A stretch of 64,000 bases of DNA, taken from sequence record LR756501.1; one strand, given 5' to 3'. The notes under the pieces were generated by a model that worked only from the letters and a program-made list of their open reading frames with translations, did not search any database and was not told the origin of the DNA. The translations under genes and the position numbers were made by a program. Shown here piece after piece: positions 14,097 to 43,945 of the stretch. Every line of letters begins with the position of its first letter. Within the stretch, counting starts at the first letter, position 1.

Positions 14097-15024
14097 GCTA
14101 TGGGTAGGATTAGTTGAAGATAATAAAGATCCAGATAGATTAGGTAGAATTAAAGTAAGAGTTCAAAGTGTATATGATGATATTCCTGTCGAAGATATAC
14201 CTTGGGCAAATCCTATAAAACAATTAAGTGCTAGATCATACGAAATGCCAGCTATTGGTAAAATAGTATCTGTTTTCTTTCCTAACGATAATATATACGA
14301 GCCTTACTATATGTACGCGGACCATTATAACGTCAATTTGAAAAAGAAACTATCTGATCTATCTGATGGTGAATACGTCAATTTCTTCGCTGTTGTTTTT
14401 GATCATAGAACAAAAGTGTATTCAGATGATACTGAATTAACTATGGATTATTTATATAATAAAATAACTATTACAAACGACGATATTAATTTAGAATTAA
14501 AGGATAACAGTAGAAAAGTAAATATAGGTTGCCAAACTGCTAGTCAACAAGCTGTGTTAGGTAATCATTGGTTTGATTGGATGGATAAGTTTGTAGAGGC
14601 ATTAGTAAAACCATCGTCTTTAATTGGTAATTCTGGTGCTCCAGTATTAAAACCAGAGATTGATCAATTATTAGTAGAATACAGAACTCTTCGTGAGACT
14701 TTTGTTTCAGATCACGTTTATATTGTAGATGATAATAAGGTTGATAAATTAGAAATGAAGTATAATTCACCATTTATGGACGACGGTGTTAAAATAAATT
14801 CCACAAATGTAACAGATATTAAAAATGTAACAGATGGTGCCCCACAATCTTTATCAGATAAGATAAAAGATCAAAAAAACAAAGAATTAGAAACTCTTAA
14901 AAACGCTGTTCCTAGTGACGCCACGAAAGAAGATAGAATGGTAGATTTACCAGAAGACGACGGTCCAGTACCTGACCCAAGTAAAGTTGGTGAAATAACA
15001 GTTTACTTTGAAATAAAATCTTAA
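14080..15024 (+). CDS. Baseplate central spike gp5/VgrG-like OB-fold protein
   Basis: WVGLVEDNKDPDRLGRIKVRV..IPWANP..MPAIGKIVSVFF; later QQAVLG..W..FVEAL. Confidence 0.85.
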   Translation: MKDLDKLWVGLVEDNKDPDRLGRIKVRVQSVYDDIPVEDIPWANPIKQLSARSYEMPAIGKIVSVFFPNDNIYEPYYMYADHYNVNLKKKLSDLSDGEYVNFFAVVFDHRTKVYSDDTELTMDYLYNKITITNDDINLELKDNSRKVNIGCQTASQQAVLGNHWFDWMDKFVEALVKPSSLIGNSGAPVLKPEIDQLLVEYRTLRETFVSDHVYIVDDNKVDKLEMKYNSPFMDDGVKINSTNVTDIKNVTDGAPQSLSDKIKDQKNKELETLKNAVPSDATKEDRMVDLPEDDGPVPDPSKVGEITVYFEIKS

Positions 15025-15025
15025 T

Positions 15026-15901
15026 ATGCCAGATAAAGTAGAGATAACACAAAAAAGATACGACGAAATAAAAAATCAAGATTTGCAAGACAATAATCTT
15101 GATGTGTACGAAACAGTTGATAATCAACAGGACGCTGATGATATTATATCTTCTATGGATAATTATGTTGACGAAGATATGATGATGGAGCAGGACACGG
15201 ATCAATTGGCTTACGGTTACGACCCGAATGCTAATTATGTTTATACTGCACCAGATAACGGTTTATATGTTGATAAAAACGCACCAGTCGCTAGTAGTAC
15301 TACAAATGGTAAACCTTATACTGGTTCTGGCGTTAGTGTTGGTTGTAAAGATATAGTTAATAATTTCAGTAGAAGTTTGAAAATATCAAAACATTTTACT
15401 CTTAGTGATGTCGCTGTATATTTTAATAGATTAGAGGATAAAACTGTAAGTGTTAAGAGAAATGGTAAAAGAGAGTCAGTATATTTCACTAAATATCAAT
15501 TAGCTTGTAACTTAAAAGCTTTAGCTGTTAATGTGTTGGATAAAATTAAAGATCAATATCCTGATATGTCTATTAATAGTTCTATTAGAAATTTGGGAAC
15601 TGGATCAGAACACGAAACAGGTCAAGCCGCGGATTTAAAATTTCCAAAACATAAAAAGAAAGATTATTATTTAATAGCAAATTGGATAATGCAGAATTGT
15701 CCTTATAATCAATTATTTTTAGAATATAGACCTTCAGAAAATCCAAGAGGTGGATGGATTCACGTGTCTTACGCAGATCCAAAAAATCTAATATTTGGAG
15801 CTTCCAAAGCAGTATCTTCACTATATAATGATAAATCAGATGCACCAGGTACAAGAGGTGGACTATCAAATATAATGTCTAATGGTGATTGGTACGGTTA
15901 A
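15026..15901 (+). CDS. Peptidase M15-family cell-wall hydrolase with acidic N-terminal region
   Basis: ISKHFTL, SSIRN..SEHETGQAADL, YNQLFLEY, WIHVSY (Zn ligands H, D, H). Confidence 0.85.
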   Translation: MPDKVEITQKRYDEIKNQDLQDNNLDVYETVDNQQDADDIISSMDNYVDEDMMMEQDTDQLAYGYDPNANYVYTAPDNGLYVDKNAPVASSTTNGKPYTGSGVSVGCKDIVNNFSRSLKISKHFTLSDVAVYFNRLEDKTVSVKRNGKRESVYFTKYQLACNLKALAVNVLDKIKDQYPDMSINSSIRNLGTGSEHETGQAADLKFPKHKKKDYYLIANWIMQNCPYNQLFLEYRPSENPRGGWIHVSYADPKNLIFGASKAVSSLYNDKSDAPGTRGGLSNIMSNGDWYG

Positions 15902-15932
15902 TATTTAAAATTTCTTTTTAATATATAGTTAC

Positions 15933-16721
15933 ATGAGTTTTGTTAAAACATACGAAGAATGGAAATTTGGGGACGCTAATAACGAAGATTTACCAGCAGA
16001 AAACGTTGATAAATTCGCTAGACATAATCCAATTAAAGTACATCCAGAAGCAGAAAAGACGCTTATCTTTACACCCGAAGACGAAGAAGGCTATCCATAT
16101 AAAATAGACGAGAGAACACACGGTCTTGAAAGTCATGCTATTAAACACTTATACGAATTCAAACCAAAAATATTTTCAGATTATATAGAAAAATCTAGAG
16201 ACATTTTAATGCCTTATATAGATGAGCAAATGAAGATATTAGATAATAGAGGATATATAATTGACGATGTTACTGAATACGAGGATATAGAAGAAATGAA
16301 CCCTTATTATATAATAAACGCTTTAGACTTTATTAATGATAAAACATATAACAACGAAGAACTTACAGAAGTAGAAGAAAAACTTATAAAATTAGTTATA
16401 TCACCAATCACAGACGAATACTGGAGATTAATAAACTTCATATTTAAAAACGCTATTAGAGTTCAAGATTATAGAAAAGACATGGGTAATAAACCAGTGT
16501 ATTATCCTGTATCATGGAAGGCTGGTAATCAGATGCTTAACTATTACGATCCAAATACAAAGGGGTTAATGGGAATAACAACAGATAAGTTGAGAGTAAA
16601 CACGTTGTTTAAGATTACCAATAATACTATCTACGAGTATTATAAGAATTTAAAAGAAGGAAGTAAGAAGCCTACACCAAACTCCGAAATTTTAGGTTTT
16701 CTCAGAACATACGGTAAATAA
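15933..16721 (+). CDS. Hypothetical protein with N-terminal KTYEEW tag
   Basis: 262 aa ORF directly after TAATATATA. Confidence 0.7.
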   Translation: MSFVKTYEEWKFGDANNEDLPAENVDKFARHNPIKVHPEAEKTLIFTPEDEEGYPYKIDERTHGLESHAIKHLYEFKPKIFSDYIEKSRDILMPYIDEQMKILDNRGYIIDDVTEYEDIEEMNPYYIINALDFINDKTYNNEELTEVEEKLIKLVISPITDEYWRLINFIFKNAIRVQDYRKDMGNKPVYYPVSWKAGNQMLNYYDPNTKGLMGITTDKLRVNTLFKITNNTIYEYYKNLKEGSKKPTPNSEILGFLRTYGK

Positions 16722-16771
16722 ATAAACCTTTCACTATTTTTTTGATAAAATATAAAAAATAATGAACTGTT

Positions 16772-17719
16772 ATGTCTGTTAAAAACCAATTATTTTGGAG
16801 AAAATATCGTCCAAAAACCTTAAATAATTTAGTCTTATTACCTAGAATTAGAAAAGTAATAGAAAACGGAATACAACAAGACCTCATCCTACACGGACAC
16901 CCAGGTACTGGTAAATCCACTTTAGCTGAAATCTTACTTAAAGATAAGCATTTTATAAAAATTAATGCTTCTATGGAAAACGGTATTGATACTCTTAGGG
17001 ATAAAATATTAGATTTCTGTGAAACAATGCCTAGTCCTTTTGTTAAATCAACAGATAAAATGAAATACGTTTATCTTGAAGAATTTGATAAAGTAACAAA
17101 TAACTTCCAAGATGGGTTTAAAGCCTTTGTGGAAAATTACGATGAAAGAGTTAGATTTATTATATCTATGAATGATATAACTAACGTCATACCTGCTTTA
17201 ATATCAAGGTTTACAAGAATATCTTTTAATCCATCCAACGATGAAGAGAAGAATTATTTATTAAGTAATTACCACAAGTACTTATTAAGTGTGTCTAAAC
17301 ATTCTAAAATGGATGTAGATGATACCGTATTAAAGAGAATCATAAGTTCAAATTTCCCAGATCTCAGGGCGTCAGTTCAACAGTTACAAACAATGCAAAT
17401 AACTGGTAGTGAAGACGAAATGGCTAGCGGTGATTATAGTGACGTTATTGGTTACATGATGAATGGTGATAATAATTTCTCTGATAACTTCTATTTTGTA
17501 ATGGACAATTGGGTTAATCAACCAAAAGATTTACTTGATATTCTTGGAAGACCATTCTATTATCATCTACTTAGAAATCATCAAAGTATAATAGATGAAA
17601 AAGGGTTTATGTTATTAGAATTAACAAAGAAATATAACGCTGAATTTGAGATGACTACTGATCCACCTCTTCACGTGTTTTCACTTATTTGTGATATGAA
17701 AGCAATCTTAAACGGATGA
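16772..17719 (+). CDS. Sliding-clamp loader AAA+ subunit (T4 gp44/RFC-like)
   Basis: WRKYRPKTL, Walker A GHPGTGKST, INASMENGIDTLR, LEEFD, PALISRF, FPDLR. Confidence 0.92.
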   Translation: MSVKNQLFWRKYRPKTLNNLVLLPRIRKVIENGIQQDLILHGHPGTGKSTLAEILLKDKHFIKINASMENGIDTLRDKILDFCETMPSPFVKSTDKMKYVYLEEFDKVTNNFQDGFKAFVENYDERVRFIISMNDITNVIPALISRFTRISFNPSNDEEKNYLLSNYHKYLLSVSKHSKMDVDDTVLKRIISSNFPDLRASVQQLQTMQITGSEDEMASGDYSDVIGYMMNGDNNFSDNFYFVMDNWVNQPKDLLDILGRPFYYHLLRNHQSIIDEKGFMLLELTKKYNAEFEMTTDPPLHVFSLICDMKAILNG

Positions 17720-18012
17720 AAGAAGTATATTATAAAATGGGGGAATTCTCTGTTGACGTAATGCCAGACGCAACCCCAATAGAACATTTATTAAAACTAA
17801 AACACGAAGCCCAAGAGGCGATCGATGAACCAGGTGATATAGTCGAGTACGCTGATTGTTTATTGGCTCTTTACGCAGCAGCCTACAAATCGGGATTTAC
17901 TTACGAAGAACTAAGAAGAGCAGGTGAGGAGAAGATAGAAGTTTTAAAGACACGAAAGTGGAAAAGAATAGAAGACGGTACTTATCAACACATAAAAAAA
18001 GAGGACTTATAG
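17716..18012 (+). CDS. DUF550-like dATP/dGTP pyrophosphohydrolase (MazG-like)
   Basis: HLLKLKHEAQEAIDEPGDIVEYADCLL..KIEVLKTRKW. Ends in TAG. Confidence 0.7.
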   Translation: MKEVYYKMGEFSVDVMPDATPIEHLLKLKHEAQEAIDEPGDIVEYADCLLALYAAAYKSGFTYEELRRAGEEKIEVLKTRKWKRIEDGTYQHIKKEDL

Positions 18013-18021
18013 TCCTCTTTT

Positions 18022-18312
18022 TTATTTAGATTTCCACAAAACAAAACCAACTTTAGCTGTTACACCGTAACTAAATTTATCACTAGCGTAAGCAACCTTT
18101 GGCTCTATTTTAAATTTCCATCTTTGATAAGACATACCAAATTCAAGATTATAAGTTGGAACTAATGGATATGCTATGATATTAGTACCTAAAGCCATTC
18201 CAATTTCATACTTTACTTTTGGTTTTGGTTTTACAATTGAGTCATTTTTTGTTTCGGCAAATAAAGGAAACAACATTAATATAAAAAGAATTGTGAATAA
18301 TAGTTTTTTCAT
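18022..18312 (-). CDS. Secreted or outer-membrane hypothetical protein
   Basis: Start moved to MKKLLFTILF (signal peptide), downstream of TAATATATA. Confidence 0.6.
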   Translation of the reverse strand: MKKLLFTILFILMLFPLFAETKNDSIVKPKPKVKYEIGMALGTNIIAYPLVPTYNLEFGMSYQRWKFKIEPKVAYASDKFSYGVTAKVGFVLWKSK

Positions 18313-18413
18313 AAAGTTTTTACTTTTATATATTATAACCAAACTCAAAAGTCCCCTTATTTAGACTGATTTAACTATTTGTTAATTTATAGTTAGCAAT
18401 CATTTAGCATAAA

Positions 18414-18443
18414 AAAAGCCTTGTAACTGAATACAAGGCTTTT
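18414..18443. terminator. Rho-independent terminator
   Basis: AAAAGCCTTGTA-ACTGAA-TACAAGGCTTTT. Confidence 0.8.
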
Positions 18444-18460
18444 AATAATTTTAGATGTGA

Positions 18461-18907
18461 TTAGAAATTTATAGCAATTCCAATATTTTGTTTAGATGGA
18501 GTCAAAGTAATGTTTTTACTTCGATTCACTAAAACTGCTGCTTTACCGAAATTAACACCAGCTAAGATGAATTCAATTCCACCTAGTACACAACAGGTAA
18601 CACCTGTATAAAATCTCCAAGTATTTGGATAATTAACATATGGGCTTGGTTGATAGGCTAAAAATAAAGCTCCAGTACCACCCAATAAGAATCCCCAAGC
18701 TAAATCCAGACCACCTTGTTTTCTGAGTTTGTGAGCTTGTTCGTTTAAATCGTAATAACTCTGAGAATGTTGCTGTTGTTGAGGTGGAGTACTTTTCAAG
18801 TCAAGATTCTCAGTTGGTTGTGTAGGTTTAATAGGATCGTTAACACCTTGTGTAAATCCTATTAAACTCGTTAAAAATAATGCGATGATCAATAATAACT
18901 TTTTCAT
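18461..18907 (-). CDS. Signal-peptide-bearing membrane protein
   Basis: MKKLLLIIALF signal peptide and two further hydrophobic segments. Confidence 0.7.
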   Translation of the reverse strand: MKKLLLIIALFLTSLIGFTQGVNDPIKPTQPTENLDLKSTPPQQQQHSQSYYDLNEQAHKLRKQGGLDLAWGFLLGGTGALFLAYQPSPYVNYPNTWRFYTGVTCCVLGGIEFILAGVNFGKAAVLVNRSKNITLTPSKQNIGIAINF

Positions 18908-18923
18908 AGTTTTTTTAATTTTT

Positions 18924-19388
18924 TTATTCGTGTAGAATCATAAGACCCCAATGGCAACCAGTCCAACCTGGAGCAAACTTATAACATTTAACAATAAATT
19001 TGTACCATCCAGATGATGTTGGTTGAAAATCAACAATTGCAGTAGATTCAGTTTTAGTGTCCTTAATTACAAGTTGATAAGTACCATCAGACATTCTTTT
19101 CCATACTTCAATATCCATATCTTCAGCTTTACCACTTTCACCAATAAGATAAGCTCTATAAGTATATCCATAAGTTAATACCCTAAAGCACTCTTTTGGT
19201 TCTGATTTAATAATATCAAATTCAAGATGAACTATCTCATATCCCTTAGTGGTTTCAACTAAATCAATAGCTTCCCACATTGTTTTAACGATAGGTTTCA
19301 TACTCTTGGAATCATACTCATTAAACCCCTGTGAATAAGAGACTAAAGACGCGAATAAGATTGCAATAACACATAATAATTTTTTCAT
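18924..19388 (-). CDS. Secreted hypothetical protein
   Basis: Start moved to MKKLLCVIAILF signal peptide. Confidence 0.7.
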   Translation of the reverse strand: MKKLLCVIAILFASLVSYSQGFNEYDSKSMKPIVKTMWEAIDLVETTKGYEIVHLEFDIIKSEPKECFRVLTYGYTYRAYLIGESGKAEDMDIEVWKRMSDGTYQLVIKDTKTESTAIVDFQPTSSGWYKFIVKCYKFAPGWTGCHWGLMILHE

Positions 19389-19447
19389 AAGCGTTTTTCT
19401 TTTCTTTTTTATATGTTGCAAAAATAATTTTGTTTATTTTTTAGCAT

Positions 19448-19476
19448 AAAAAAAGGGGTTAAACAACCCCTCTTTT
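19448..19476. terminator. Rho-independent terminator
   Basis: A-run, GGGGTT-AAAC-AACCCC, T-run. Confidence 0.75.
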
Positions 19477-20001
19477 TTATTTTTTTATCAACTGAGCGTC
19501 AATGAAATCTAAATCCACTAGTACTCTTTTAGTTTCTACTTTCTTATCATTCTTTTTTTCGTATGTTACTTCGTAAATTTCCTGATATATAACATTCACA
19601 GTATCACCAATATGTCCATTTAATTTATCGTAAAGAATTTTATATTTAGATACTTGATTGTTTTTAGTCCCGTCTCCTTGAATAGTAAAAGTTCCGTGTT
19701 GGCATTGAAATACTACACCAAATTTTTCAGGAATAGTTGATTCACTAACTTGAACAGTTTGTCCGTTCATTTTACCAATTACAATCCCTTTATCTCCATT
19801 CATATCAACTCCACCAAGAGGATTGTTCATATCTCCCATCATGGTGGTTCCCAAATGAACGTCGTGTTTTGATGGTGTATAAATCATATTTACAATAACA
19901 GCTTTTTCGTACATGTTGGCTGATTGTTCTCTTTCTGGTCCACAAGATGTTAAGAAAAACCCTAACACAAATACTGATAATACTAAAAATATTTTCTTCA
20001 T
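19477..20001 (-). CDS. Putative lipoprotein
   Basis: Lipobox FFLTSC-G after a hydrophobic stretch; SD AAGGAG upstream. Confidence 0.75.
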   Translation of the reverse strand: MKKIFLVLSVFVLGFFLTSCGPEREQSANMYEKAVIVNMIYTPSKHDVHLGTTMMGDMNNPLGGVDMNGDKGIVIGKMNGQTVQVSESTIPEKFGVVFQCQHGTFTIQGDGTKNNQVSKYKILYDKLNGHIGDTVNVIYQEIYEVTYEKKNDKKVETKRVLVDLDFIDAQLIKK

Positions 20002-20013
20002 TTTTCTTTCTCC

Positions 20014-21171
20014 TTATTTTGTTAAATTAAACCATCTTTTTTTCTTTACTTCTACCTTTTTAGGTAAATTTTTTGTTGGGTTTTCACTTTCTAATTTCTC
20101 CATGAAATCTTCAACGTAGTTTACATATTCTAAGAACTTAGGTTCTCTTTTGATATGTATATCCCTTACATTAGGAAGATCTACTTCAATGTGGCATCTT
20201 ACGTTAGCAGGATTTGCGTCGATAATGAATATATCTGTTGATAAGAAAATAGCCTCTCTGATATCGTGTGTAACAAGAATTACAGTAGGATCGATATGGT
20301 TATTATCTTGAAAGATCTTCCTCATAAATTCCTGCATTGCTCTCCTTGTTACAATATCCAAAGCCCCAAATGGTTCGTCCATAAGAAGAATGGTTGAATT
20401 AGCAACGAGGTTTCTTGCAATAGCCACCCTTTGTAACTGTCCACCAGAGAGATTAGGGTACTTCGCGAATTTATCTTCGTGTCCTTCTAATCCAACGATC
20501 TTAATCATTTCCATCGCTTTCTCGTGAGCGTCTTTCTTTGAAACATGTTTCAATGTTAATGGCATTGCTACGTTCTCAATTACAGTCAGCCAAGGGAAAG
20601 AAGAATAGTTCTGAAAAACCATTGGAATTCTATCGTTCTCAGTCAACTCTTTACCGTGAAGAAGAACCTTACCACTTGTAGGTTGCTGTAAACCAGCAAT
20701 ATAACGAAGAATTGTAGATTTACCACAACCACTTTGTCCAAGAATTGTAACAAACTGACCCCTATCAATGATGTCTTTTATTTCTAAAGTAAAATCATCG
20801 AAGATGGTGACTTTACCGTTGTTATAAGTTTGTGTGATATGAGAAACATCCATGATGTTTACTGGATTGTACTGCACACCACTTAATTTCTCGATAGTTT
20901 GTGGTTTTACTTTAACAACAGGAGTAGGTTCCACACTTAGTTCTACTACTCTAGGTTCTTCTTTTACACCAAAAGCCTGTTGTATATTTTTAGCCAATTC
21001 CGAGCTAGAGTCTTTTTGCACGTTATCAAGAAATGGATTTGATTTCCCACTACTGGGAGTTTCATCTATATCAAAATTAGAAGGAGTTTTGGTTTCAGCG
21101 ACAACTTCCACCTCTACTTCTTTGGTTTCTTCAACCTCTTCTTTTTCTTTACCTCTATTAAAAAAATTCAT
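20014..21171 (-). CDS. ABC transporter ATP-binding protein (TauB/SsuB/NitT type) with acidic N-terminal extension
   Basis: GQSGCGKST, MVFQNYSSFPWLTV, LSGGQLQRVAIAR, LLMDEPFGALD, VTHDIREA. Confidence 0.95.
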   Translation of the reverse strand: MNFFNRGKEKEEVEETKEVEVEVVAETKTPSNFDIDETPSSGKSNPFLDNVQKDSSSELAKNIQQAFGVKEEPRVVELSVEPTPVVKVKPQTIEKLSGVQYNPVNIMDVSHITQTYNNGKVTIFDDFTLEIKDIIDRGQFVTILGQSGCGKSTILRYIAGLQQPTSGKVLLHGKELTENDRIPMVFQNYSSFPWLTVIENVAMPLTLKHVSKKDAHEKAMEMIKIVGLEGHEDKFAKYPNLSGGQLQRVAIARNLVANSTILLMDEPFGALDIVTRRAMQEFMRKIFQDNNHIDPTVILVTHDIREAIFLSTDIFIIDANPANVRCHIEVDLPNVRDIHIKREPKFLEYVNYVEDFMEKLESENPTKNLPKKVEVKKKRWFNLTK

Positions 21172-21217
21172 TTTCTTTATTTTTTATTGTTGTTTATATT
21201 GCTGTTTGACTTCAATA

Positions 21218-22039
21218 TTATACATATTTCCATTTAAATAATCTTCTTTCACCCATTCTTAAAAGTTTATCTTGAATATAACCTACAATAAGAACAAGTA
21301 AAAGGATAGCGTATAAGGCGTCGTACCTTGATTCATTTCTAACATTATTAGCTAAAGCACCAACACCGCCAGTATTATAAATCATTTCAGCTACAACGAT
21401 GTAAGTCCAAGAAATTGCGATAAGAACGATAATATCGATAGATATTTTAGATAAGACAGATGGAAGATAAACTTTTCTAAACATTTGCCATTTAGTTGCT
21501 CCAAGTGTCCACATTGTTTGTTTAAGTGTTTCATCTACTTCCATAATTCTTTGAACTACAACTGGAAGAAGATATACAAAAATACCAACCGCTAAAAAGT
21601 GAACCTTTACACCGTAAGTTAATCCAAAAGTGAAAACAAAGATACTAGTCATAATTGGAAGTGGAAGGAACCTCGCTGTATCAACAGGTTTACTCATAGT
21701 GTAGTTAAAGAAAGCAAATAAACCCATAAGAAAACCAAGTGGAAGAGCAAGAGCAACAGCTTCTAAGTAACCCAAAATATTTACTCCAAGTGAAAATCCA
21801 GTGTTAAGGAGTAAATGTTTTTCATTGAATAAGTATGGAATAGACGAGAAAACTTTAATAGGACTAGGAAGAGCTTTGTCTGATACAACCCCAATTGCTG
21901 ATATAATCCACCAGGTTGAGAAAAACAAAACAATTCCTAAATATGATAAGATAGTTTTGGAGCTCATACTGATTTTGTTATCAGCTCCCATCTTAAACAT
22001 AAGTGGAATTTCTTTGAAGAATAATTTTATTATTTTCAT
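21218..22039 (-). CDS. ABC transporter permease (TauC/SsuC type)
   Basis: LPSPIKV, TM helices, EAA-loop region TLGATKWQMFRKVYLPSVL, IVVAEM. Confidence 0.92.
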   Translation of the reverse strand: MKIIKLFFKEIPLMFKMGADNKISMSSKTILSYLGIVLFFSTWWIISAIGVVSDKALPSPIKVFSSIPYLFNEKHLLLNTGFSLGVNILGYLEAVALALPLGFLMGLFAFFNYTMSKPVDTARFLPLPIMTSIFVFTFGLTYGVKVHFLAVGIFVYLLPVVVQRIMEVDETLKQTMWTLGATKWQMFRKVYLPSVLSKISIDIIVLIAISWTYIVVAEMIYNTGGVGALANNVRNESRYDALYAILLLVLIVGYIQDKLLRMGERRLFKWKYV

Positions 22040-22069
22040 TTTCTTGATTTTAATTTGATTGGTTTAGAT

Positions 22070-22107
22070 AAAAAAATTGGGGGTCTTCTTGCGTCAACCC
22101 CCAATTT
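22070..22107 (-). terminator. Intra-operon terminator/stem-loop between SBP and permease genes
   Basis: 11-bp stem AAATTGGGGGT/ACCCCCAATTT followed by a U-tract on the minus strand. Confidence 0.75.
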
Positions 22108-22121
22108 GCGTCAAACAACAA

Positions 22122-23708
22122 TTACTCAGCAATTAATCCAAAGTCAGTTCTACGATTAGCGGCCTTCTGATTTTCAGTAGCGTTTGCTGCTACTATGTCG
22201 GTCGAACCATTTGCAGGTTTGTCAGGGCCATTACCAACAATCACAAATTTATTAGCGTCAAACCCGTAGGTTTTGATAAGATAATCAGCTACAGCATTGG
22301 CTCTCTGTTTCGAGAGAGACACATTGCTCTTATAGTTACCAGTGTTATCGGTGTTACCCTCAACCCTGATTTTTGCACCCTTCCAACCCTTTGCAATTGG
22401 ACCCATTTCCCTATCAATGATAGTCTTAGCGTCATTATCTAAGAGGGCAGAACCAGTTGCGAAGTTAATAGATACCATACGGGTAGCCATTGCAGGTTTG
22501 GAAAGATCTGCTGTGGTTGTTGGAGCAAACTTCTGCTCAGTTTCAGCCACATTGTTTCCACTATTCATATCAGTAATACTTTCAATAATACCAGAGTACG
22601 ATGCCTTTGTCCAAGGAATAGGATTCTTTGCGTAGAAACCACCAGTTTCAGATGAAGTCTGTGAGTAAATCCTACTCATACGAGTATAGAGATCGTCACC
22701 GTCAACACCCTGGTAATTTGCGTCTAATCCAAAGAACGCCTTGTTATCACCATAAGTTGAGAACCTTACTTTATTAACACCGTCAATAACGAGATCAAGT
22801 GTGAAACCAAATGCCTTTGAGAAAGCTTCTGCTGCAAGTTTACGGTTACCCTCATCCTGCATATCAGCGTTGGCAGTCAACCAACCCCTTACTAACTTAT
22901 CAAAGTCTTTAGCTTTATCTTGAAGAACACTTTTCTTAGCAATCATTCCATCCATAATAATAGAGGTAGCAAATTTTGTAGAAGTTACAACCTTTGATCC
23001 AGTTACTGCTTTGATACAGTCACCGTCATCTGGAGACCAAACTACTGCTAAATCAACCTGACCTGCCTTGAACAATTCAGCGGCTTTTGCACCACTTTCA
23101 ACATATACGATAGTTACATCTTTGATAGTCTTTCCACCTGCGTCCAACCAGTTAATTAAAAGGGTTGAAGAAGCTGTTGGGAAAGCACAAGCGATCTTTG
23201 TATTTTTGGTTAAGTCGGCTACACTATTAAAAGAACGAGTCCCTACAATAACGTCAGCTCCACGACTATCATCAACCTTGAAGAACTGTACCACACCAGC
23301 CTTAGCCAATTCACCAGCTTCGCCCATTTCAGAACCTGAAATATCGGTTGTGGTGTAGATAGCATCTACCTGATCTGCTAAAAGTGACTCAATACAAACC
23401 TTACGGTCGTCCATCTGATTGATTTGAAGTTTGAGATCAAAATTCTTGAACATCTTGCTCTCTTTGTTTACGTCTTTTCCACTATTGTACCATACGACTG
23501 GAGCAAATCCACTCCAAGTATTAAGTCCGATAGTGAGGTCGGCGGACTTTCCACCAAACCAAGAGGAAATTCCTCCACTTTTTGTTTCACCCGCACTAGG
23601 CGTGTTACTTTTGAATTTTGGGAAGAGCCAAAAAGCTGACCCAAAAAGAAGTCCTGCGATTACCAAACCGACGAGAACTTTACCTGTTGTTGTTAATCTA
23701 CTAAACAT
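22122..23708 (-). CDS. Membrane-anchored NMT1/SsuA-like substrate-binding protein fused to an OmpA peptidoglycan-binding domain
   Basis: N-terminal TM helix; PBP2-type region (NTWSGFAP, DDSRGADVIV, AVVWSPD); C-terminal INFATGSA..VEGNTDNTG..LSKQRANAV..NRRTDF. Confidence 0.88.
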   Translation of the reverse strand: MFSRLTTTGKVLVGLVIAGLLFGSAFWLFPKFKSNTPSAGETKSGGISSWFGGKSADLTIGLNTWSGFAPVVWYNSGKDVNKESKMFKNFDLKLQINQMDDRKVCIESLLADQVDAIYTTTDISGSEMGEAGELAKAGVVQFFKVDDSRGADVIVGTRSFNSVADLTKNTKIACAFPTASSTLLINWLDAGGKTIKDVTIVYVESGAKAAELFKAGQVDLAVVWSPDDGDCIKAVTGSKVVTSTKFATSIIMDGMIAKKSVLQDKAKDFDKLVRGWLTANADMQDEGNRKLAAEAFSKAFGFTLDLVIDGVNKVRFSTYGDNKAFFGLDANYQGVDGDDLYTRMSRIYSQTSSETGGFYAKNPIPWTKASYSGIIESITDMNSGNNVAETEQKFAPTTTADLSKPAMATRMVSINFATGSALLDNDAKTIIDREMGPIAKGWKGAKIRVEGNTDNTGNYKSNVSLSKQRANAVADYLIKTYGFDANKFVIVGNGPDKPANGSTDIVAANATENQKAANRRTDFGLIAE

Positions 23709-23787
23709 AATTTTTCTCCTTTTTAAATTTTAATTGTTTAATTAATTGTTGATTGTTGTTTATAATTGTGTTAATTGTTTGCTTATA

Positions 23788-24849
23788 TTAAATTAAATCT
23801 TTAAATGTGCCACTGGTTTTCTGAGTCATTGGCTGAGCCAACACTTTCTGGTAATCATTGGAAGTCTGAGCAAAAGTTGCGTTTTCGTCCTTGTTTACCA
23901 ATGAGCGGAAGTCTGTGAGTTGGTTAAATGTATCTTGATCATACATTGATAACAGTTTAGCTCCTTCATCTTCCCATACTGCTGACTGAATATCTTTATC
24001 ATATACCCAATCCTTTGCCTGCTCTGTGAAGCGGGTGATGTTTGCTACATAATTGGAAACCTTTTCAGCGTAAGCCTCAGTTGCCATTTCCCAAAGAGCT
24101 CTTTCATCAGGGTTATCATTAAGAAGTGATTTTGCTGAATCAAAAGCATTTGATGTGCTAGTCAATAGTTTCAAGTCACTCTTTTTCAGATCAATATCCT
24201 GTTTCAAAAGTTCGAGGTCGTCTCCCCAACTATCATACAATCCAGTACAATATTTGATTGCGGTTTGAATTGCTTTCAGACGAGGAACAAGGTTCTGGTT
24301 TGACTGCATTAACCTGTTTGCGATGATTGAGTTTTTGTTGGCTCTCCTAGCGTACTCGGGATCTTTCTTCTTCTCAGTAATTTCCTGTGCTTTCTTAGCC
24401 TGTGCAAACTTGTCTTTAGCCATAGTTTGTTTTTCATCCATTGCCATTAACAGTTCGTGCTCACCAGCCTTCATAGTCTTAATTGACTCGTTGAGTTCCT
24501 GACGTTTTCCTGACCATTTTCTCCACTGGATTTCCATAACAGAGATAGGGTCACTTTTTACGATAGATCTCCAAAGTTTCTTCACGAAGAGCTGATAACG
24601 TAAGGAAATCATATCTTTATTGGCCCAAATGAGCCAGCAGATTAACCCAACAGTGCCTAACATAGCACCGAGGATTATAGCGTTTGTAACGATTGATATA
24701 AGAATTGGTAGTACTTTCCATAAGACCCACCCAATCCCTACGATGGCTCCACCAGCAACCAACCAAGACACTAACTTTTCGTTAGGGGCTAGGATGCCTT
24801 TTTTATTGTCGCCATTACCACTTGTAGGTAACATGTTTTGCATTTCCAT
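23788..24849 (-). CDS. TM-anchored PspA/IM30-like long coiled-coil protein
   Basis: Two N-terminal hydrophobic helices followed by about 200 aa of helical coiled coil. PspA relationship is inferred. Confidence 0.6.
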   Translation of the reverse strand: MEMQNMLPTSGNGDNKKGILAPNEKLVSWLVAGGAIVGIGWVLWKVLPILISIVTNAIILGAMLGTVGLICWLIWANKDMISLRYQLFVKKLWRSIVKSDPISVMEIQWRKWSGKRQELNESIKTMKAGEHELLMAMDEKQTMAKDKFAQAKKAQEITEKKKDPEYARRANKNSIIANRLMQSNQNLVPRLKAIQTAIKYCTGLYDSWGDDLELLKQDIDLKKSDLKLLTSTSNAFDSAKSLLNDNPDERALWEMATEAYAEKVSNYVANITRFTEQAKDWVYDKDIQSAVWEDEGAKLLSMYDQDTFNQLTDFRSLVNKDENATFAQTSNDYQKVLAQPMTQKTSGTFKDLI

Positions 24850-24894
24850 AATAGTTTATTTCTAATTGTTGTTTATAATTGTTGTTTGTTGTTT

Positions 24895-25047
24895 TTATTT
24901 TGGACCAGTGAAATTATCACCTAATCTTTTATCATATGTTAAATTACATTTATCACAGTGCCATTTGCCGTTTATACCGTAAGCTGAATGAAACATTCTA
25001 CAATACCACACATCACTGAACCAGTTGATTAAGAAGTTTTTTATCAT
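24895..25047 (-). CDS. Small Cys/His (Zn-ribbon-like) protein, not in ORF track
   Basis: MIKNFLINWFSDVWYCRMFHSAYGINGKWHCDKCNLTYDKRLGDNFTGPK (50 aa); ATGA overlap with the upstream stop. Confidence 0.65.
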   Translation of the reverse strand: MIKNFLINWFSDVWYCRMFHSAYGINGKWHCDKCNLTYDKRLGDNFTGPK

Positions 25048-25772
25048 TTTACGTAACTTTGAATTTTCTGAATATCACCGTTAACCTTGTCTACTACAAT
25101 CTGGTAAGCCTTTTCAAACTTAGTCTTTTTGATAGTAATCTTCTGACTTTCACCCTGAATAAAGGTGTTATTCTCAGCAATCTTCTGTGCATTTAACACC
25201 ATCTGTTGCTGTAAAGTCTGAATCTGTTGAGTAATTTCATTGATTTTGGCTTCAGCTGCTGCGTTAGCCTGTTGGAGAGATTGAATCTCTTGTGTCTTGG
25301 CGTTAACCTGTGCACTACCCTCTTGAGAAAGGTAAGATTCGAATTCTTGTTTATGTTTTTCGAACAAATCAATATACTTTGAAGCGGTTTGTACAAGAAC
25401 AGTGGGTGTAACACCCTGTGCTTTCAAACCGACATAAGCTAATTGATAGAGACTTGGCTCGGGAATACTACCAGCCATTTGACCCATTTCGTGCAATGTG
25501 TTTGCGTATTCGAAATAATCTGGACCAGGAATATTCTGATCTTCCATAAATTTATAGAGATGGTCAAGATAAGCCTGATCTGGGGTTTCTACGTCTGCGT
25601 TCATTACCACTGGTTGTGGCATGATAACTGGATTAACAATAGGTTGTGAACCTGCGTACCTAGCCTGAAACTGTGATGGATTCACTGTCTGTGGAGAGGT
25701 TTCATTTTGAACTGGTTGTTCGTCTTCCTTAATAAGAAGACCTTTTAACCAACCACCTTTTTCTTTTGCCAT
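25044..25772 (-). CDS. Coiled-coil hypothetical protein, first gene of the ABC/OmpA operon
   Basis: MAKEKGGWLKGLLI.., PGPDYFEY, Q-rich coiled coil; TAnnTTTG box upstream. Confidence 0.75.
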   Translation of the reverse strand: MAKEKGGWLKGLLIKEDEQPVQNETSPQTVNPSQFQARYAGSQPIVNPVIMPQPVVMNADVETPDQAYLDHLYKFMEDQNIPGPDYFEYANTLHEMGQMAGSIPEPSLYQLAYVGLKAQGVTPTVLVQTASKYIDLFEKHKQEFESYLSQEGSAQVNAKTQEIQSLQQANAAAEAKINEITQQIQTLQQQMVLNAQKIAENNTFIQGESQKITIKKTKFEKAYQIVVDKVNGDIQKIQSYVK

Positions 25773-25864
25773 AAAATAATTTGTTTTTATAAATGTAACA
25801 CAAAAGTATAACTAAATTTCGACACTACAAAATTATTTTGAAAATATTTTAAACTTTTTAAAAA

Positions 25865-26317: not shown

Positions 26318-27658
26318 TTAATCGTGAATACATCTAATTGATAACGCGTCCCTATTATCAGTCATACCTCTCCAAATCCAAGTACTTATATGTTCAAAAC
26401 TTAAAGTATAACCTGTCCAATTTTGTGAATTGAAATAACGTTTAGAAGTGTAAAAATTGGCATTTAAATTAATATTGCAGTAATAAGATCCACCATCTTT
26501 AACCCACATTCCACCAGGTAAAGCCGTAAATCCACTTGAATTAGTAGCCCCAGTGTTTGGGTCGGTCCAATGATTAAAACTAGTTTCTTTCATATATCCA
26601 CCAGCAATGGTATCAATACTAAGCCAAGGATTAATGACTTGCCAAGATCCACCAAAAGATACAACTAATTCATTCCATTCAGCATCTGTTGGAATATGCC
26701 AATCATCTGGGCAAATTCCCTGTGCCCCTTCTGTGGTATCATAAGCCATTGCTTCATCCCAACTATAAAGTCCACCGTAAATGTTACAATTATCTTGATC
26801 ATTACCGTAACAAAATTTCTCTACAATAGTATCTTGATGAAATCCTTGTCCACTGGTTCTAAATGTTCCGACATTCAGATTTTCAGCCATCCATATCTGC
26901 ATAGTAGTGTCCATAGGGGATTTTTTACTATTTACAGCAATCTGCACTGTGGCGTAATTATGTCCATTAATATCTAGACATTTAAGAAAATTGAAAGTGA
27001 GAGTCTTACTCTTGTTTGGTCTATCCATAATGAAATTGGTATAGGTACCTGTTGTTCCCTTGTACTGTAAGAGTTCACCATTTTCGTAAGTCATTTCAAC
27101 CGTTGTCTGACTATTTTTCAATTTACTACCACCTGTCTGTGGTTCAAAGGAAGTGTAACTAATATTTATATCATTTTCAAAAAAACTATTACTTAATAGT
27201 TTAGTGGAATAATTGAAATTCTTACCACTAACTCTTACAAGGTACATTCCTTGTTTAACACCATTAATTGTAAATGTATGCAATCCGTATTGTAAGAATT
27301 TATCTGTGGTATAAAGAGATTTCCCACACATATCTATAATTGAAATGTTGGTATTTCCAGAACCTATAAATTTTAGAGTGGATTTATCAGTCATTGGATT
27401 TGGATAAATCTGCATATCTGACTGTTTTTCAGGATTTTGAATTCCAACGCCCCATCCAATAAGGTGAAGAACCTCACCCCCGTTTAGATAGACTGTATCT
27501 GGATCTGAAATATTAACAACTTGAATTGTACCAACAACGTTGGTATCACCAGAAGCGCCAAAACTAATAAGATAATCTGGTAGATTAAATTGGGCGTAAG
27601 ACGCGATGGCAAGAGCCAAGAAAACAATTACTGATGTAAATCTTTTCATATTTTTCAT
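26318..27658 (-). CDS. Secreted protein with T9SS type-A sorting domain and FISUMP domain
   Basis: Signal peptide; IYPNP..IIDMCGK..GMYLVRV; QIWMAENLN, YGGLYSWDEA, QGICPDDWHIPTDAEW, TNSSGFTALPGG. Confidence 0.85.
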   Translation of the reverse strand: MKNMKRFTSVIVFLALAIASYAQFNLPDYLISFGASGDTNVVGTIQVVNISDPDTVYLNGGEVLHLIGWGVGIQNPEKQSDMQIYPNPMTDKSTLKFIGSGNTNISIIDMCGKSLYTTDKFLQYGLHTFTINGVKQGMYLVRVSGKNFNYSTKLLSNSFFENDINISYTSFEPQTGGSKLKNSQTTVEMTYENGELLQYKGTTGTYTNFIMDRPNKSKTLTFNFLKCLDINGHNYATVQIAVNSKKSPMDTTMQIWMAENLNVGTFRTSGQGFHQDTIVEKFCYGNDQDNCNIYGGLYSWDEAMAYDTTEGAQGICPDDWHIPTDAEWNELVVSFGGSWQVINPWLSIDTIAGGYMKETSFNHWTDPNTGATNSSGFTALPGGMWVKDGGSYYCNINLNANFYTSKRYFNSQNWTGYTLSFEHISTWIWRGMTDNRDALSIRCIHD

Positions 27659-27711
27659 ATTTAGATTGTAAAATTACAACTTAATTACGAAATAAAAAAA
27701 TAAATTTAAAA

Positions 27712-28590
27712 TTATTTATGATTATTAGGTTCAACGTGAACATTCACTATCGCAGTTGGTTGAATTTTATTAATTTCTTTTTCTAAATCTTCTGAAATAC
27801 CGTGTGCTTCAGTTAAAGAATACTTATCATCAACGTGTACACAAACATCTACGTAATACTGGTGTCCAGATTGTCTTACTTTAAAACTATGATAAGATAA
27901 AATACTGGTAAATCTTTTTATAACTGTTTCTATATCATCTACACAATCAGGTGCTCTATCAAGAAGTGCGTCTACCGCTCTTTTACCAAGTTTCCAACAA
28001 ACGTGAATAACAATCAGAGCTACAAACAAAGCAGCAATAGAGTCAGCGTAATTAAAGAGTTTAATTCCCGTCATTTGTCCGATAGTCACAGAAATAAGAC
28101 CAAGTAAAACAACCGCTGAACTCCATATATCTGTTGAAAAATGTAAAGCGTCCGCTTCAAGTGCTTGACTATTATACTTTTTAGCTGCTCTCATAAGTTT
28201 CCTACTTCTCCAAACATCAATCACAATAGATGTAATAACTACAATATAACTAAATATAGTAACTTTAATATCAATGTTACCTGTTATAAGTCTATGTATT
28301 GCTTCGTAACAAATCCAAAAACAAGTCACAAACAGAAGTAGTGTTTCAATAAGTGCTGAGAAGTTTTCTATTTTACCGTGTCCGTAATGGTGATCTTTAT
28401 CAGCGTCTTTAGTTGATACTCTTACAGCGAACAAAGTGATAATGGCAGCAACTAAATCTAAACCAGAGTGTAGTGCTTCAGATAAAATACCCAAACTATT
28501 GGTCATAGTACCAATAGTGAGTTTAAATCCTGTTAAAAAGATAGCAGCAAAAACAGATATTAATGCTACTTGATTTTTTTCTTTGTTCAT
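27712..28590 (-). CDS. Cation diffusion facilitator (FieF-like) metal efflux transporter
   Basis: SEALHSGLD, HHYGHGKIE, ALEADALHFSTD, DALLD, C-terminal VHVEP. Confidence 0.93.
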   Translation of the reverse strand: MNKEKNQVALISVFAAIFLTGFKLTIGTMTNSLGILSEALHSGLDLVAAIITLFAVRVSTKDADKDHHYGHGKIENFSALIETLLLFVTCFWICYEAIHRLITGNIDIKVTIFSYIVVITSIVIDVWRSRKLMRAAKKYNSQALEADALHFSTDIWSSAVVLLGLISVTIGQMTGIKLFNYADSIAALFVALIVIHVCWKLGKRAVDALLDRAPDCVDDIETVIKRFTSILSYHSFKVRQSGHQYYVDVCVHVDDKYSLTEAHGISEDLEKEINKIQPTAIVNVHVEPNNHK

Positions 28591-28592
28591 TT

Positions 28593-28805
28593 TTATAAAG
28601 AATAATAACTATCACTGGGAAGACAAATCCAACATATCGCGTAAAGAAGAATTCCTATACCGTAACAAAAAACTGATAGACCCCAAAAGATTCTTAAAAT
28701 AACTGGATCTATACCGAAATAATCACCTATACCTGAGCACACGCCAGCAAGTATAGAATGGTCGTACCTTCTTATAACTCTGTTTTCTATTCTTTCGTTT
28801 TTCAT
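28593..28805 (-). CDS. pspC: PspC domain protein
   Basis: RRYDHSILAGVCSGIGDYFGIDPVILRI..LLYAICWICLP. Confidence 0.9.
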   Translation of the reverse strand: MKNERIENRVIRRYDHSILAGVCSGIGDYFGIDPVILRIFWGLSVFCYGIGILLYAICWICLPSDSYYSL

Positions 28806-37386: not shown

Positions 37387-39003
<1,617 letters not shown>

Positions 39004-43571: not shown

Positions 43572-43945
43572 TAAAAATGTTCGAACAATTCAAAGAAAGT
43601 CTAGAAGATCCTTATGGAGAAGAAATAGAAGGTGAACTACCAGTACAAGATAACGATAAAGATATTCCAGATGATGAAATGGTAGATATTGATGATCTCT
43701 ACGACGTTATGGGCGACTTGATGTGGAAAGCCAATGTGCTCTATTGTAAATTTAGTGGTGAAAATCCAGATGAAGTTGATAACGCTCCTTCACCCGAAGA
43801 CGCTATGGAATCAATGGATGAAATACCCGAAGATAGTGAATATTACGAAGAGGCTACAAACATTTCAAATGAAATAGGTACACTCCAAGAACAAATTGAC
43901 GAAAAAGAAGCAGAAGAAGCTTTTGAAGACGATGACGAAGATTAA
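43568..43945 (+). CDS. Very acidic protein with KMFEQF and DPYGEE tags
   Basis: MIKMFEQFKESLEDPYGEE; D/E-rich throughout. Confidence 0.7.
   Translation: MIKMFEQFKESLEDPYGEEIEGELPVQDNDKDIPDDEMVDIDDLYDVMGDLMWKANVLYCKFSGENPDEVDNAPSPEDAMESMDEIPEDSEYYEEATNISNEIGTLQEQIDEKEAEEAFEDDDED

What the first reader, a model, noticed from the sequence alone, without database searches (positions are those of the whole stretch)
20014..25808. Complete phage-borne envelope operon: coiled-coil protein, PspA-like protein, SBP-OmpA fusion, ABC permease, ABC ATPase
Seen: five large co-oriented genes (plus a 50-aa Cys ORF) behind one TAnnTTTG box, with an internal terminator after the SBP-OmpA gene that would raise its relative level. 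The SBP is TM-anchored and tethered to peptidoglycan via OmpA, and the ATPase has an acidic N-terminal extension of about 100 aa. Known: TauABC/SsuABC-type importers, and PspA/Vipp1 membrane-repair polymers. Inference: an uncharacterised membrane-maintenance or signalling system, not simply a nutrient importer, co-opted to stabilise the infected cell or exclude superinfection.
Basis: partly seen in the sequence, partly recalled or inferred. Interest (0 to 1): 0.65.

Follow-up and report, generated by a model that had tools for sequence, protein, structure and literature searches.

The report
Phage copy of PspA-like ABC cassette
A 735-kb phage carries a host-derived five-gene set that joins a membrane-anchored PspA-like protein and a coiled-coil partner to a cell-wall-tethered ABC importer; the same set occurs in many Bacteroidota and other huge phages, its type has been noted in the literature, and its function has never been tested.

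Summary
On the minus strand, 25772 to 20014, lie a 242-aa coiled-coil protein, a 353-aa two-TM PspA/Vipp1-like protein, a 528-aa TM-anchored NMT1-type binding protein fused to an OmpA peptidoglycan-binding domain, a TauC-like permease and a TauB-like ATPase. The window is part of LR756501.1, a 735,411-bp uncultured phage.

The five genes are a fixed unit. The order CC-TM-SBP-permease-ATPase was detected complete in 48 of 83 Bacteroidota-type loci (most others end at a contig end), in 40 of 44 IMG/VR viral contigs, and in Lak phages. Phage copies do not form one clade (p-AU 6e-8). Each group sits beside bacteria of its own habitat, so the cassette was exchanged at least twice.

A stem-loop after the binding-protein gene is real and recurs in relatives. 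A PspC gene lies 2.8 kb upstream, and directly beside the cassette in a close relative.

Weaker points: the TAnnTTTG box is not above chance, the 50-aa Cys ORF is absent from close relatives, and the unit probably runs on to a terminator at about 19450.

The operon type was described in bacteria by Ravi et al. 2024, and PspA next to ABC transporters in huge phages by a 2026 preprint. Ligand and function are unknown. This is a new member of a known, uncharacterised kind.

The parts
25801..25808 (-). TACTTTTG, a candidate Bacteroidota-type -7 promoter box 29 nt upstream of the first ATG
   Evidence: The position is right, but the motif is not enriched (101 found, 97 expected) and five more copies lie inside the operon on this strand.
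25044..25772 (-). CC242: cytoplasmic coiled-coil protein. It has a conserved N-terminal basic/hydrophobic motif, a P/Q-rich linker, three short helices (66-117) and one long helix (123-240).
   Evidence: pLDDT 81.7. No fold or family match. Orthologues lie in Lak phages (E 1e-33), bacteria and viral contigs, always directly upstream of the TM protein.
24895..25047 (-). 50-aa Cys/His-rich ORF overlapping the CC242 stop codon by 4 nt; lineage-specific or spurious
   Evidence: Absent from L087 and L093. A relative's contig in run X12 skips 24896-25051. No family match.
23788..24849 (-). TMCC353: two-TM hairpin anchor (residues about 25-77), amphipathic helix 78-99, a conserved 'DP' motif at 100-101, a PspA/Vipp1-like helical hairpin (101-161 and 164-243), helix 259-304, and a disordered tail ending in a conserved F-x-D-L motif
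   Evidence: (pLDDT 73.6). 21 of 107 family members give sub-threshold PF04012 hits. The top 15 Foldseek hits include 14 Vipp1/PspA/ESCRT-III entries. VIA-align Z 12.6 to Vipp1 and 11.8 to PspA 4whe. hhalign gives the same register as VIA-align.
22122..23708 (-). SBP-OmpA: N-terminal TM anchor, NMT1/SsuA-type substrate-binding domain and C-terminal OmpA-like peptidoglycan-binding domain
   Evidence: Full-length match to PHROG 25518. D454 and R469 of the OmpA motif are invariant in alignment A3.
22070..22107 (-). Stem-loop (12 bp) plus U7 run between the SBP-OmpA and permease genes; an intrinsic-terminator-like attenuator or mRNA stabiliser
   Evidence: A stable hairpin (-10 kcal/mol or lower) occurs at this junction in 56 of 101 related loci, against 17 of 87 and 7 of 95 at the two upstream junctions.
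21218..22039 (-). ABC permease, BPD_transp_1, TauC/SsuC/SaoP-like, 5 hydrophobic stretches (19-residue hydropathy scan)
20014..21171 (-). ABC ATPase, TauB/NrtD/SaoA-like, with a net-acidic N-terminal extension of about 105 aa
   Evidence: 36 of the 40 listed natural variants fall on third codon positions.
19477..20001 (-). 174-aa lipoprotein (lipobox LTSC), probably co-transcribed; not conserved in relatives
   Evidence: Absent downstream of the ATPase gene in L087 and L093.
19448..19470 (-). GGGGTT-GTTT-AACCCC hairpin followed by T7; likely end of the transcription unit
28593..28805 (-). 70-aa PspC-domain protein on the same strand, 2.8 kb upstream. In relative L093 its orthologue lies directly next to the CC gene.
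   Evidence: PF04024 E 6e-21, 74.5 bits, cut-off 25.

Best explanation
This is a host-derived (Bacteroidota) five-gene envelope cassette carried by a huge phage.

Shown by sequence and models:
- A binding-protein-dependent ABC importer of the NitT/TauT type. Its binding protein is anchored in the inner membrane by one TM helix and carries an OmpA-type peptidoglycan-binding domain.
- Two cytoplasmic-side proteins always encoded directly upstream: a coiled-coil protein, and a two-TM protein whose soluble part resembles the alpha0-alpha1-alpha2 core of PspA/Vipp1.

Inferred:
- TMCC353 and CC242 form a PspA/ESCRT-III-like scaffold on the inner face of the membrane.
- That scaffold works together with the wall-tethered importer to keep the inner membrane intact, energised or osmotically balanced under envelope stress.
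- The hairpin after the binding-protein gene lets the first three products exceed the permease and ATPase.
- The phage expresses its own copy during its long infection to keep the host membrane competent until assembly is complete.

The transported solute is unknown.
For: Domain identities.

Fixed gene order:
- 48 of 83 loci, nearly all labelled Bacteroidota (the rest mostly cut by contig ends).
- 40 of 44 IMG/VR contigs of 24-519 kb.
- Lak-C1 and Lak-B4, with profile E-values of 1e-33 for CC and 1e-80 for TM.
- Gaps are short: median 18, 39, 55 and 2 nt.

PspA-like nature of TMCC353:
- 21 of 107 family members hit PF04012, best E 4e-5.
- Foldseek's top list is Vipp1/PspA/CHMP1B.
- VIA-align maps model residues 78-240 onto Vipp1 2-157 with Z 12.6, and gives Z 11.8, rmsd 2.5 to PspA 4whe.
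- hhalign independently pairs residues 99-143 with E. coli PspA 23-67, including the DP motif.

PSP theme:
- A PspC gene lies in the window and is adjacent to the cassette in L093.
- Four Bacteroidota genomes with the cassette, the 735-kb phage and Lak-C1 all lack a canonical PspA. Each phage record has exactly one TMCC gene.

Host origin:
- L019 flanks are leuCD, leuA, sufBD and infB.
- Phage rows are not one clade, p-AU 6e-8.

Selection and expression:
- 36 of 40 listed variants lie at third codon positions.
- Contigs from a lake metatranscriptome run cover four of the five genes well.

The hairpin recurs in relatives.

Prior comparative work reached a similar reading.
Against: - TMCC353 itself has no Pfam hit, and family hits to PF04012 are all below the gathering score.
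- hhalign probability is only 2.7%.
- Unrelated long helical hairpins (PI3K p85, chemoreceptors, dynein stalk) score Z of about 11, nearly as high as PspA.
- CC242 has no recognisable fold.
- The CC-TM pair also occurs without ABC genes (L091), so the two halves can function apart.
- Bacillus phage G has the ABC genes and two SBP-OmpA genes but no CC or TM homologue.
- RNA-run contigs may stem from DNA carry-over.
Confidence: 0.55

Rival explanations
1. This is an ordinary auxiliary nutrient importer (sulfonate, taurine, nitrate, bicarbonate or a thiamine precursor) taken from the host. The two coiled-coil genes are accessory or unrelated, and the OmpA fusion merely keeps the binding protein near the transporter.
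For: The best family matches of all three ABC parts are SsuA/TauA, TauC/SsuC and TauB/NrtD. The permease is a type I importer fold. A hairpin after the binding-protein gene is a classic feature of importer operons. Phage G keeps only the ABC and SBP-OmpA part.
Against: All equivalog cut-offs are missed by a wide margin, so no standard substrate can be assigned. The CC and TM genes are present, in the same order and with short gaps, in nearly every complete locus in bacteria and phages. PspC is adjacent in a relative.
Confidence: 0.2
2. This is a superinfection-exclusion or anti-phage membrane system. The membrane-anchored coiled-coil proteins and the ABC ATPase sense or block incoming phage DNA or membrane damage caused by rival phages.
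For: The location is in a phage genome among other envelope genes: a CDF transporter, a T9SS-sorted protein and small lipoproteins. PspA systems were first seen as a response to phage secretin stress (established knowledge). There are weak generic PADLOC hits to ZorB-type OmpA domains and mad3/mad8 ATPases.
Against: The PADLOC hits only reflect the generic OmpA and ABC domains, and the CC and TM proteins have none. The cassette sits between housekeeping genes in bacterial chromosomes and is widespread in Bacteroidota (more than 568 genomes). That looks like a core envelope function rather than a patchy defence island.
Confidence: 0.1
3. This is a signalling device. The wall-tethered binding protein acts as a sensor, the ABC transporter as a flux or conformation sensor, and the TM coiled-coil protein as a chemoreceptor-like transducer.
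For: Chemoreceptor cytoplasmic hairpins match the TMCC353 model at Z of about 11.5. The doubly tethered SBP cannot diffuse freely. The ATPase carries a variable N-terminal extension.
Against: No kinase, response regulator, CheW/CheA or DNA-binding gene is conserved beside the cassette. Foldseek ranks Vipp1/PspA first. The chemoreceptor matches have very large rmsd, 22-33 A.
Confidence: 0.08

Closest known systems
Operons with TM-bearing PspA/Snf7 homologues plus an ABC ATPase, a permease and a PBPB-OmpA protein (Ravi et al. 2024, mSystems, PMC11237479)
   Same: [quoted passage not shown] The paper also mentions a third coiled-coil gene in Bacteroidetes neighbourhoods.
   Different: That description includes an AAA+ ATPase in the operon. 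Here none lies in the unit; an AAA gene sits 2.3 kb away on the other strand. The paper treats bacteria only, and I could not fetch its example accessions to check orthology.
Phage-encoded PspA next to ABC transporters in huge phages (Yuan & Chen, bioRxiv 10.64898/2026.10.24.761521)
   Same: Huge phages carry PspA-type genes beside complete SBP/permease/ATPase sets. The proposed role is membrane-stress management during infection.
   Different: In that preprint, the IMG/VR screen and the reference set were defined by PF04012, with a 200-300 aa length window for IMG/VR, and most relatives were from Bacillota. TMCC353 is 353 aa, TM-anchored and gives no PF04012 hit. LR756501.1 and Lak-C1 have no PF04012 match at all. 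This cassette may therefore lie outside their set.
Classical Psp and Lia systems (E. coli pspF-pspABCDE; B. subtilis liaIH)
   Same: There is a PspA-like helical hairpin with an amphipathic helix and a DP motif before it. A small PspC-domain membrane protein is nearby. The membrane anchoring of the effector recalls LiaI-LiaH or PspBC-PspA.
   Different: Here the anchor is fused to the PspA-like protein. There is no PspF-type regulator, PspB or two-component system. The partner is an ABC importer, and sequence similarity to PspA is marginal.
SsuABC / TauABC / NrtABCD importers (TC 3.A.1.16 and 3.A.1.17)
   Same: The families of binding protein, permease and ATPase are the same, and the nearest solved SBPs are SsuA 2x26 and 3uif.
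   Different: The binding protein is TM-anchored and fused to an OmpA domain. All equivalog cut-offs are missed. The ATPase has a long N-terminal extension. The genes are obligately linked to two coiled-coil genes.
Bacillus phage G gp243-gp250
   Same: A phage-borne permease (28% identical), ATPase (38%) and two full-length SBP-OmpA proteins (26-28%).
   Different: It has no CC or TM homologue, a different gene order and a Gram-positive host. It forms a very distant branch in the tree.

Membership tests
PspA/IM30/Vipp1 (ESCRT-III superfamily), for TMCC353 | Match to Pfam PF04012 above the gathering score (33.9 bits) | tested here: not met
   The window protein has no Pfam hit at E <= 0.1. 21 of 107 family members hit PF04012 (best E 4.2e-5; bit scores not returned). 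Genome scans found only sub-threshold hits in TMCC paralogues.
PspA/IM30/Vipp1 (ESCRT-III superfamily), for TMCC353 | Long antiparallel alpha1-alpha2/3 hairpin preceded by the amphipathic helix alpha0 | tested here: met
   The AF2 model has helices 78-99, 101-161 and 164-243 with pLDDT of about 90. VIA-align maps residues 78-240 onto Vipp1 2-157 with Z 12.6, and gives Z 11.8, rmsd 2.5 to PspA 4whe. The fold is not specific: other hairpins reach Z of about 11.
PspA/IM30/Vipp1 (ESCRT-III superfamily), for TMCC353 | Detectable sequence homology in profile comparison | tested here: inconclusive
   hhalign of A4 against E. coli PspA gives E 0.017 and probability 2.7%. It aligns 99-143 with 23-67, in the same register as the structural alignment and including the conserved DP motif.
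PspA/IM30/Vipp1 (ESCRT-III superfamily), for TMCC353 | Polymerises into rings or rods and binds or remodels membranes | not testable with these tools
   This needs purified protein and electron microscopy.
NitT/TauT-type ABC importer | NMT1/SsuA-type binding protein, BPD_transp_1 permease and ABC_tran ATPase encoded together | tested here: met
   PF13379 at 39.5 bits, PF00528 at 56 bits and PF00005 at 106.4 bits, all above their cut-offs.
NitT/TauT-type ABC importer | Equivalog-level match that would name the substrate (TauABC, SsuABC, NrtBCD, SaoAP) | tested here: not met
   Best scores are 97.8 against 295 (SaoP), 187.4 against 360 (SaoA), 186.4 against 357 (TauB) and 45.1 against 163.5 (SsuA family).
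OmpA_C-like peptidoglycan-binding domain | PF00691 match with the conserved Asp and Arg of the peptidoglycan-binding motif | tested here: met
   59.4 bits against a cut-off of 27.2. The NTD..G and LS..RA motifs are present, and D454 and R469 are invariant in A3.
TM-PspA/Snf7 + ABC + PBPB-OmpA operon type of Ravi et al. 2024 | TM-bearing PspA/Snf7 homologue, ABC ATPase, permease and PBP-OmpA protein in one operon | tested here: met
   The PspA-like assignment itself is probable, not proven.
TM-PspA/Snf7 + ABC + PBPB-OmpA operon type of Ravi et al. 2024 | AAA+ ATPase in the same operon | tested here: not met
   There is no AAA+ gene between 19448 and 25808. An AAA gene (16772-17719) lies on the opposite strand next to baseplate genes. 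None was seen in the bacterial loci inspected.
Classical Psp operon | A PspC-domain partner near the PspA gene | tested here: met
   PF04024 at 74.5 bits at 28593-28805, 2.8 kb upstream. It is adjacent to the cassette in L093.
Classical Psp operon | PspF-type regulator and PspB | not tested
   No dedicated search was made. Neither appeared among the neighbours scanned.
Known anti-phage defence systems (PADLOC) | Specific match of the system's signature proteins | tested here: not met
   Only generic OmpA (ZorB) and ABC ATPase (mad3/mad8) domain hits were found. There were none for CC242 or TMCC353.

The most novel reading that the evidence does not exclude
The cassette is a Bacteroidota-type replacement for the Psp system, built as one trans-envelope machine. 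The wall-tethered binding protein and its ABC transporter report or correct a disturbance at the inner membrane-peptidoglycan interface. ATP hydrolysis by the ABC ATPase, rather than an AAA+ partner, drives assembly or disassembly of the membrane-anchored ESCRT-III-like polymer through the coiled-coil adaptor. Huge phages have captured it repeatedly to hold the host membrane together, or to shut out rivals, during very long infections.
Probability: 0.12. Interest if true: 0.8.

Novelty: new member of a known kind. Interest (0 to 1): 0.45.

Why it matters
PspA/ESCRT-III proteins repair and remodel membranes in all domains of life, but how they are anchored and powered in Bacteroidota is unknown. 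The genomes inspected here lack a canonical PspA.

A five-gene unit that is nearly invariant in hundreds of Bacteroidota, and that was taken up at least twice by the largest known phages, is a well-defined and testable candidate for that role.

For phage biology it adds a concrete case to the emerging view that huge phages manage the host envelope. It also gives a defined gene set and a tractable bacterial counterpart, such as the Niastella vici cassette, for experiments.

Tried and rejected
- ESM Atlas look-ups for both coiled-coil proteins failed three times because the machine was busy.
- CC242 as a PspA-like protein: rejected. The model is three short helices plus a single 118-residue helix, with only generic coiled-coil matches at Z <= 7.2 and no consistent Pfam family.
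- The Cys50 ORF as part of the system: rejected because it is not conserved.
- The 174-aa lipoprotein as a conserved member: rejected.
- Phage G gp246-248 as CC/TM counterparts: no profile or Pfam match.
- The TAnnTTTG motif as statistical evidence of a promoter: rejected.
- A profile search of solved structures with the TMCC family gave only coiled-coil noise.
- Reading the flanks of L023 with TAG=Q did not open frames.
- A known defence system: no match.
- One clade for all phage copies: rejected by the AU test.
The reads call used 5,795 letters.

Full report
**What is there**

The stretch 20014-25808 holds, on the minus strand, six open frames in one direction:
- CC242 (25044-25772)
- a 50-aa Cys-rich ORF (24895-25047)
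- TMCC353 (23788-24849)
- a 528-aa protein (22122-23708)
- a 273-aa permease (21218-22039)
- a 385-aa ATPase (20014-21171)

- The 528-aa protein joins an NMT1/SsuA-type binding domain (PF13379, 39.5 bits) to an OmpA peptidoglycan-binding domain (PF00691, 59.4 bits), behind one N-terminal TM helix (residues 5-31).
- The permease is TauC/SsuC/SaoP-like and the ATPase is TauB/NrtD/SaoA-like. All equivalog cut-offs are missed by a wide margin, so no substrate can be named.
- The ATPase Walker A motif starts at residue 145, and the first 105 residues are net acidic.

The region is 100% identical to LR756501.1/LR756503.1, a 735,411-bp 'uncultured phage'. From memory, not checked here, this is the largest genome of Al-Shayeb et al. 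2020. Phage genes surround the region: a fused topoisomerase II, an SbcC-like protein, GroEL and a baseplate protein.

**Signals**

- A TACTTTTG box sits 29 nt before the first ATG. The motif is no more frequent in the window than chance (101 against 97 expected), and five more copies lie inside the operon on the same strand.
- The stem-loop after the binding-protein gene is strong: 12 bp, -18.6 kcal/mol, a U7 run, z = -2.6.
- The ATPase gene is followed after 12 nt by a 174-aa lipoprotein gene and then by a canonical hairpin plus T7 at 19448-19470. The unit probably ends there.

**The cassette is a conserved unit**

The SBP-OmpA fusion has hundreds of relatives of 43-47% identity, mostly from Bacteroidota and named 'phosphate ABC transporter substrate-binding/OmpA family protein' or NitT/TauT SBP by their sources.

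A scan of one genome per species found more than 568 carriers.
- In 83 fetched loci the order CC-TM-SBP-permease-ATPase was complete in 48. Most of the rest are cut by contig ends.
- One gut Bacteroidales locus is flanked by leuCD, leuA, cvpA, sufBD and infB, so it is chromosomal.

The same order is found in:
- Lak-C1 and Lak-B4 (profile E 1e-33 for CC and 1e-80 for TM)
- closer relatives of the window phage
- 40 of 44 IMG/VR contigs of 24-519 kb

Bacillus phage G has the permease, the ATPase and two SBP-OmpA genes, but no CC or TM homologue.

Median gaps between the five genes are 18, 39, 55 and 2 nt. A stable hairpin lies in the SBP-permease gap in 56 of 101 loci, against 17 of 87 and 7 of 95 at the two upstream junctions. 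The attenuator idea therefore rests on a feature that recurs across relatives.

**Origin**

In a tree of SBP-OmpA proteins:
- Lak phages are sister (support 99) to gut Bacteroidales, Prevotella and Tannerellaceae.
- The window phage and its relatives are sister (support 97) to environmental Bacteroidales and Prolixibacteraceae.
- Phage G is a distant outlier.

Forcing Lak and window-type rows into one clade costs 96 log-likelihood units (p-AU 6e-8). The cassette therefore moved between Bacteroidota and huge phages at least twice. The much larger bacterial diversity suggests host-to-phage transfer, but the direction was not formally tested.

**The two unknown proteins**

TMCC353 has no family hit of its own. 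A profile search found 931 clusters of relatives, 512 of them at E <= 1e-10.
- Of 107 aligned members, 21 give sub-threshold hits to PspA_IM30, far more than to any other family.
- The AF2 model (pLDDT 73.6) shows a TM hairpin, a short helix 78-99, two long antiparallel helices (101-161 and 164-243) and a further helix.
- Foldseek's top 15 include 14 Vipp1, PspA or CHMP1B entries, with E 0.003-0.06.
- VIA-align superposes residues 78-240 on Vipp1 2-157 (Z 12.6) and matches PspA 4whe at Z 11.8, rmsd 2.5 A. Unrelated hairpins reach Z of about 11, so the fold alone does not decide.
- hhalign against E. coli PspA is weak (E 0.017). It pairs residues 99-143 with PspA 23-67, the same register as the structural alignment, and includes the near-invariant DP motif.

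I take this as probable, not proven, membership of the PspA/ESCRT-III superfamily, with a fused two-TM anchor.

CC242 (pLDDT 81.7) has a conserved N-terminal basic/hydrophobic motif, a linker, three short helices and one 118-residue helix. No fold or family matches it.

Three further points bear on these proteins:
- The CC-TM pair also occurs on its own in Saprospiraceae genomes.
- The four Bacteroidota genomes inspected, the 735-kb phage and Lak-C1 have no canonical PspA.
- Each of the two phage records has one TMCC gene.

**Further context**

- A PspC-domain gene lies at 28593-28805 on the same strand. In a relative whose TMCC protein is 81% identical, it directly abuts the CC gene.
- Contigs from a lake metatranscriptome run cover the ATPase, SBP-OmpA, TMCC and CC genes at 90-99% identity. 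This is compatible with expression but not proof of it.
- Of the 40 listed natural differences in the ATPase gene, 36 fall on third codon positions, which indicates purifying selection.
- The same data show that the Cys50 ORF is an indel absent from relatives.

**Mechanism**

Shown:
- the parts
- their predicted topology
- their strict linkage
- their host origin

Inferred:
- A PspA-like scaffold made of TMCC353 and CC242 on the cytoplasmic face works with a wall-tethered ABC importer in envelope maintenance.
- The phage uses the cassette to keep the host membrane competent.

Rivals:
- a plain nutrient importer
- a superinfection-exclusion or defence system (no PADLOC support)
- a signalling device (no output genes)

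**Comparison with the literature**

- Ravi et al. [quoted passage not shown] They proposed a link between membrane remodelling and solute transport.
- Yuan & Chen 2026 reported PF04012-type PspA next to complete ABC transporters in 15 huge-phage loci.

The present locus fits the first description except for the missing AAA+ gene. It probably escapes the second paper's PF04012-based definition.

**Verdict**

The feature is real, conserved and host-derived. It is a new phage member of a known but experimentally uncharacterised kind, of moderate interest.

Noticed in passing
window 28593-28805 (-): A 70-aa PspC-domain protein (PF04024, 74.5 bits). In relative L093 (5979-6188) its orthologue lies directly upstream of the cassette.
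   Followed up: yes
window 26318-28590 (-): A CDF cation-efflux transporter (27712-28590) and a protein with a T9SS C-terminal sorting domain plus a Fib_succ_major domain (26318-27658) sit between PspC and the cassette. The T9SS signal points to a Bacteroidota host.
   Followed up: partly
window 20711-20723; L087 10718-12266; L095, L096, L098: Relatives carry an insertion of about 1.6 kb in the ABC ATPase gene close to the Walker A codons (runs X10 and X12). In L087 a 364-aa ORF with a weak MTES_1575 hit lies between two ATPase pieces. This looks like a mobile intron or homing-endonuclease insertion.
   Followed up: no
window 14080-18012 (+): A baseplate gene (Phage_base_V, 14080-15024), an AAA ATPase (16772-17719) and a dATP/dGTP pyrophosphohydrolase (17716-18012) converge on the cassette. 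The AAA gene keeps this position in L093 and in the contig encoding P0022.
   Followed up: partly
window 18022-19421 (-): Three small ORFs with signal-peptide or lipoprotein-like N-termini (108, 148 and 165 aa) and no family match lie downstream of the terminator.
   Followed up: no
L091 8534-10187 (-); L092 7972-8991 (+): Saprospiraceae genomes that have the full cassette also carry a second TM gene elsewhere without ABC genes (with a CC gene beside it in L091 only), next to unrelated genes such as a CCA/polyA polymerase, FKBP and SbcCD-like proteins.
   Followed up: partly
L023 1-4100 and 9900-13503: The flanks of the cassette in this 'Prevotella sp.' MAG contig have almost no ORFs of 120 aa or more under code 11 or with TAG=Q. 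There are no N runs. Unexplained.
   Followed up: partly
L005, L014: A 331-kb 'bacterium' contig with many small unannotated ORFs and a 'Candidatus Absconditicoccaceae' MAG contig both carry the Bacteroidota-type cassette and group together in the tree. They may be phage contigs binned into MAGs.
   Followed up: no
L002, L003 (Lak-C1, Lak-B4): Under TAG=Q the genes upstream of the Lak cassette contain many recoded TAG codons (8-16 per gene). The cassette genes themselves contain none.
   Followed up: no
window 37387-39000, 43942-45642, 50762-54010 (-): GroEL, an SbcC-like protein and a fused topoisomerase II (large and small subunit in one 1082-aa frame).
   Followed up: no
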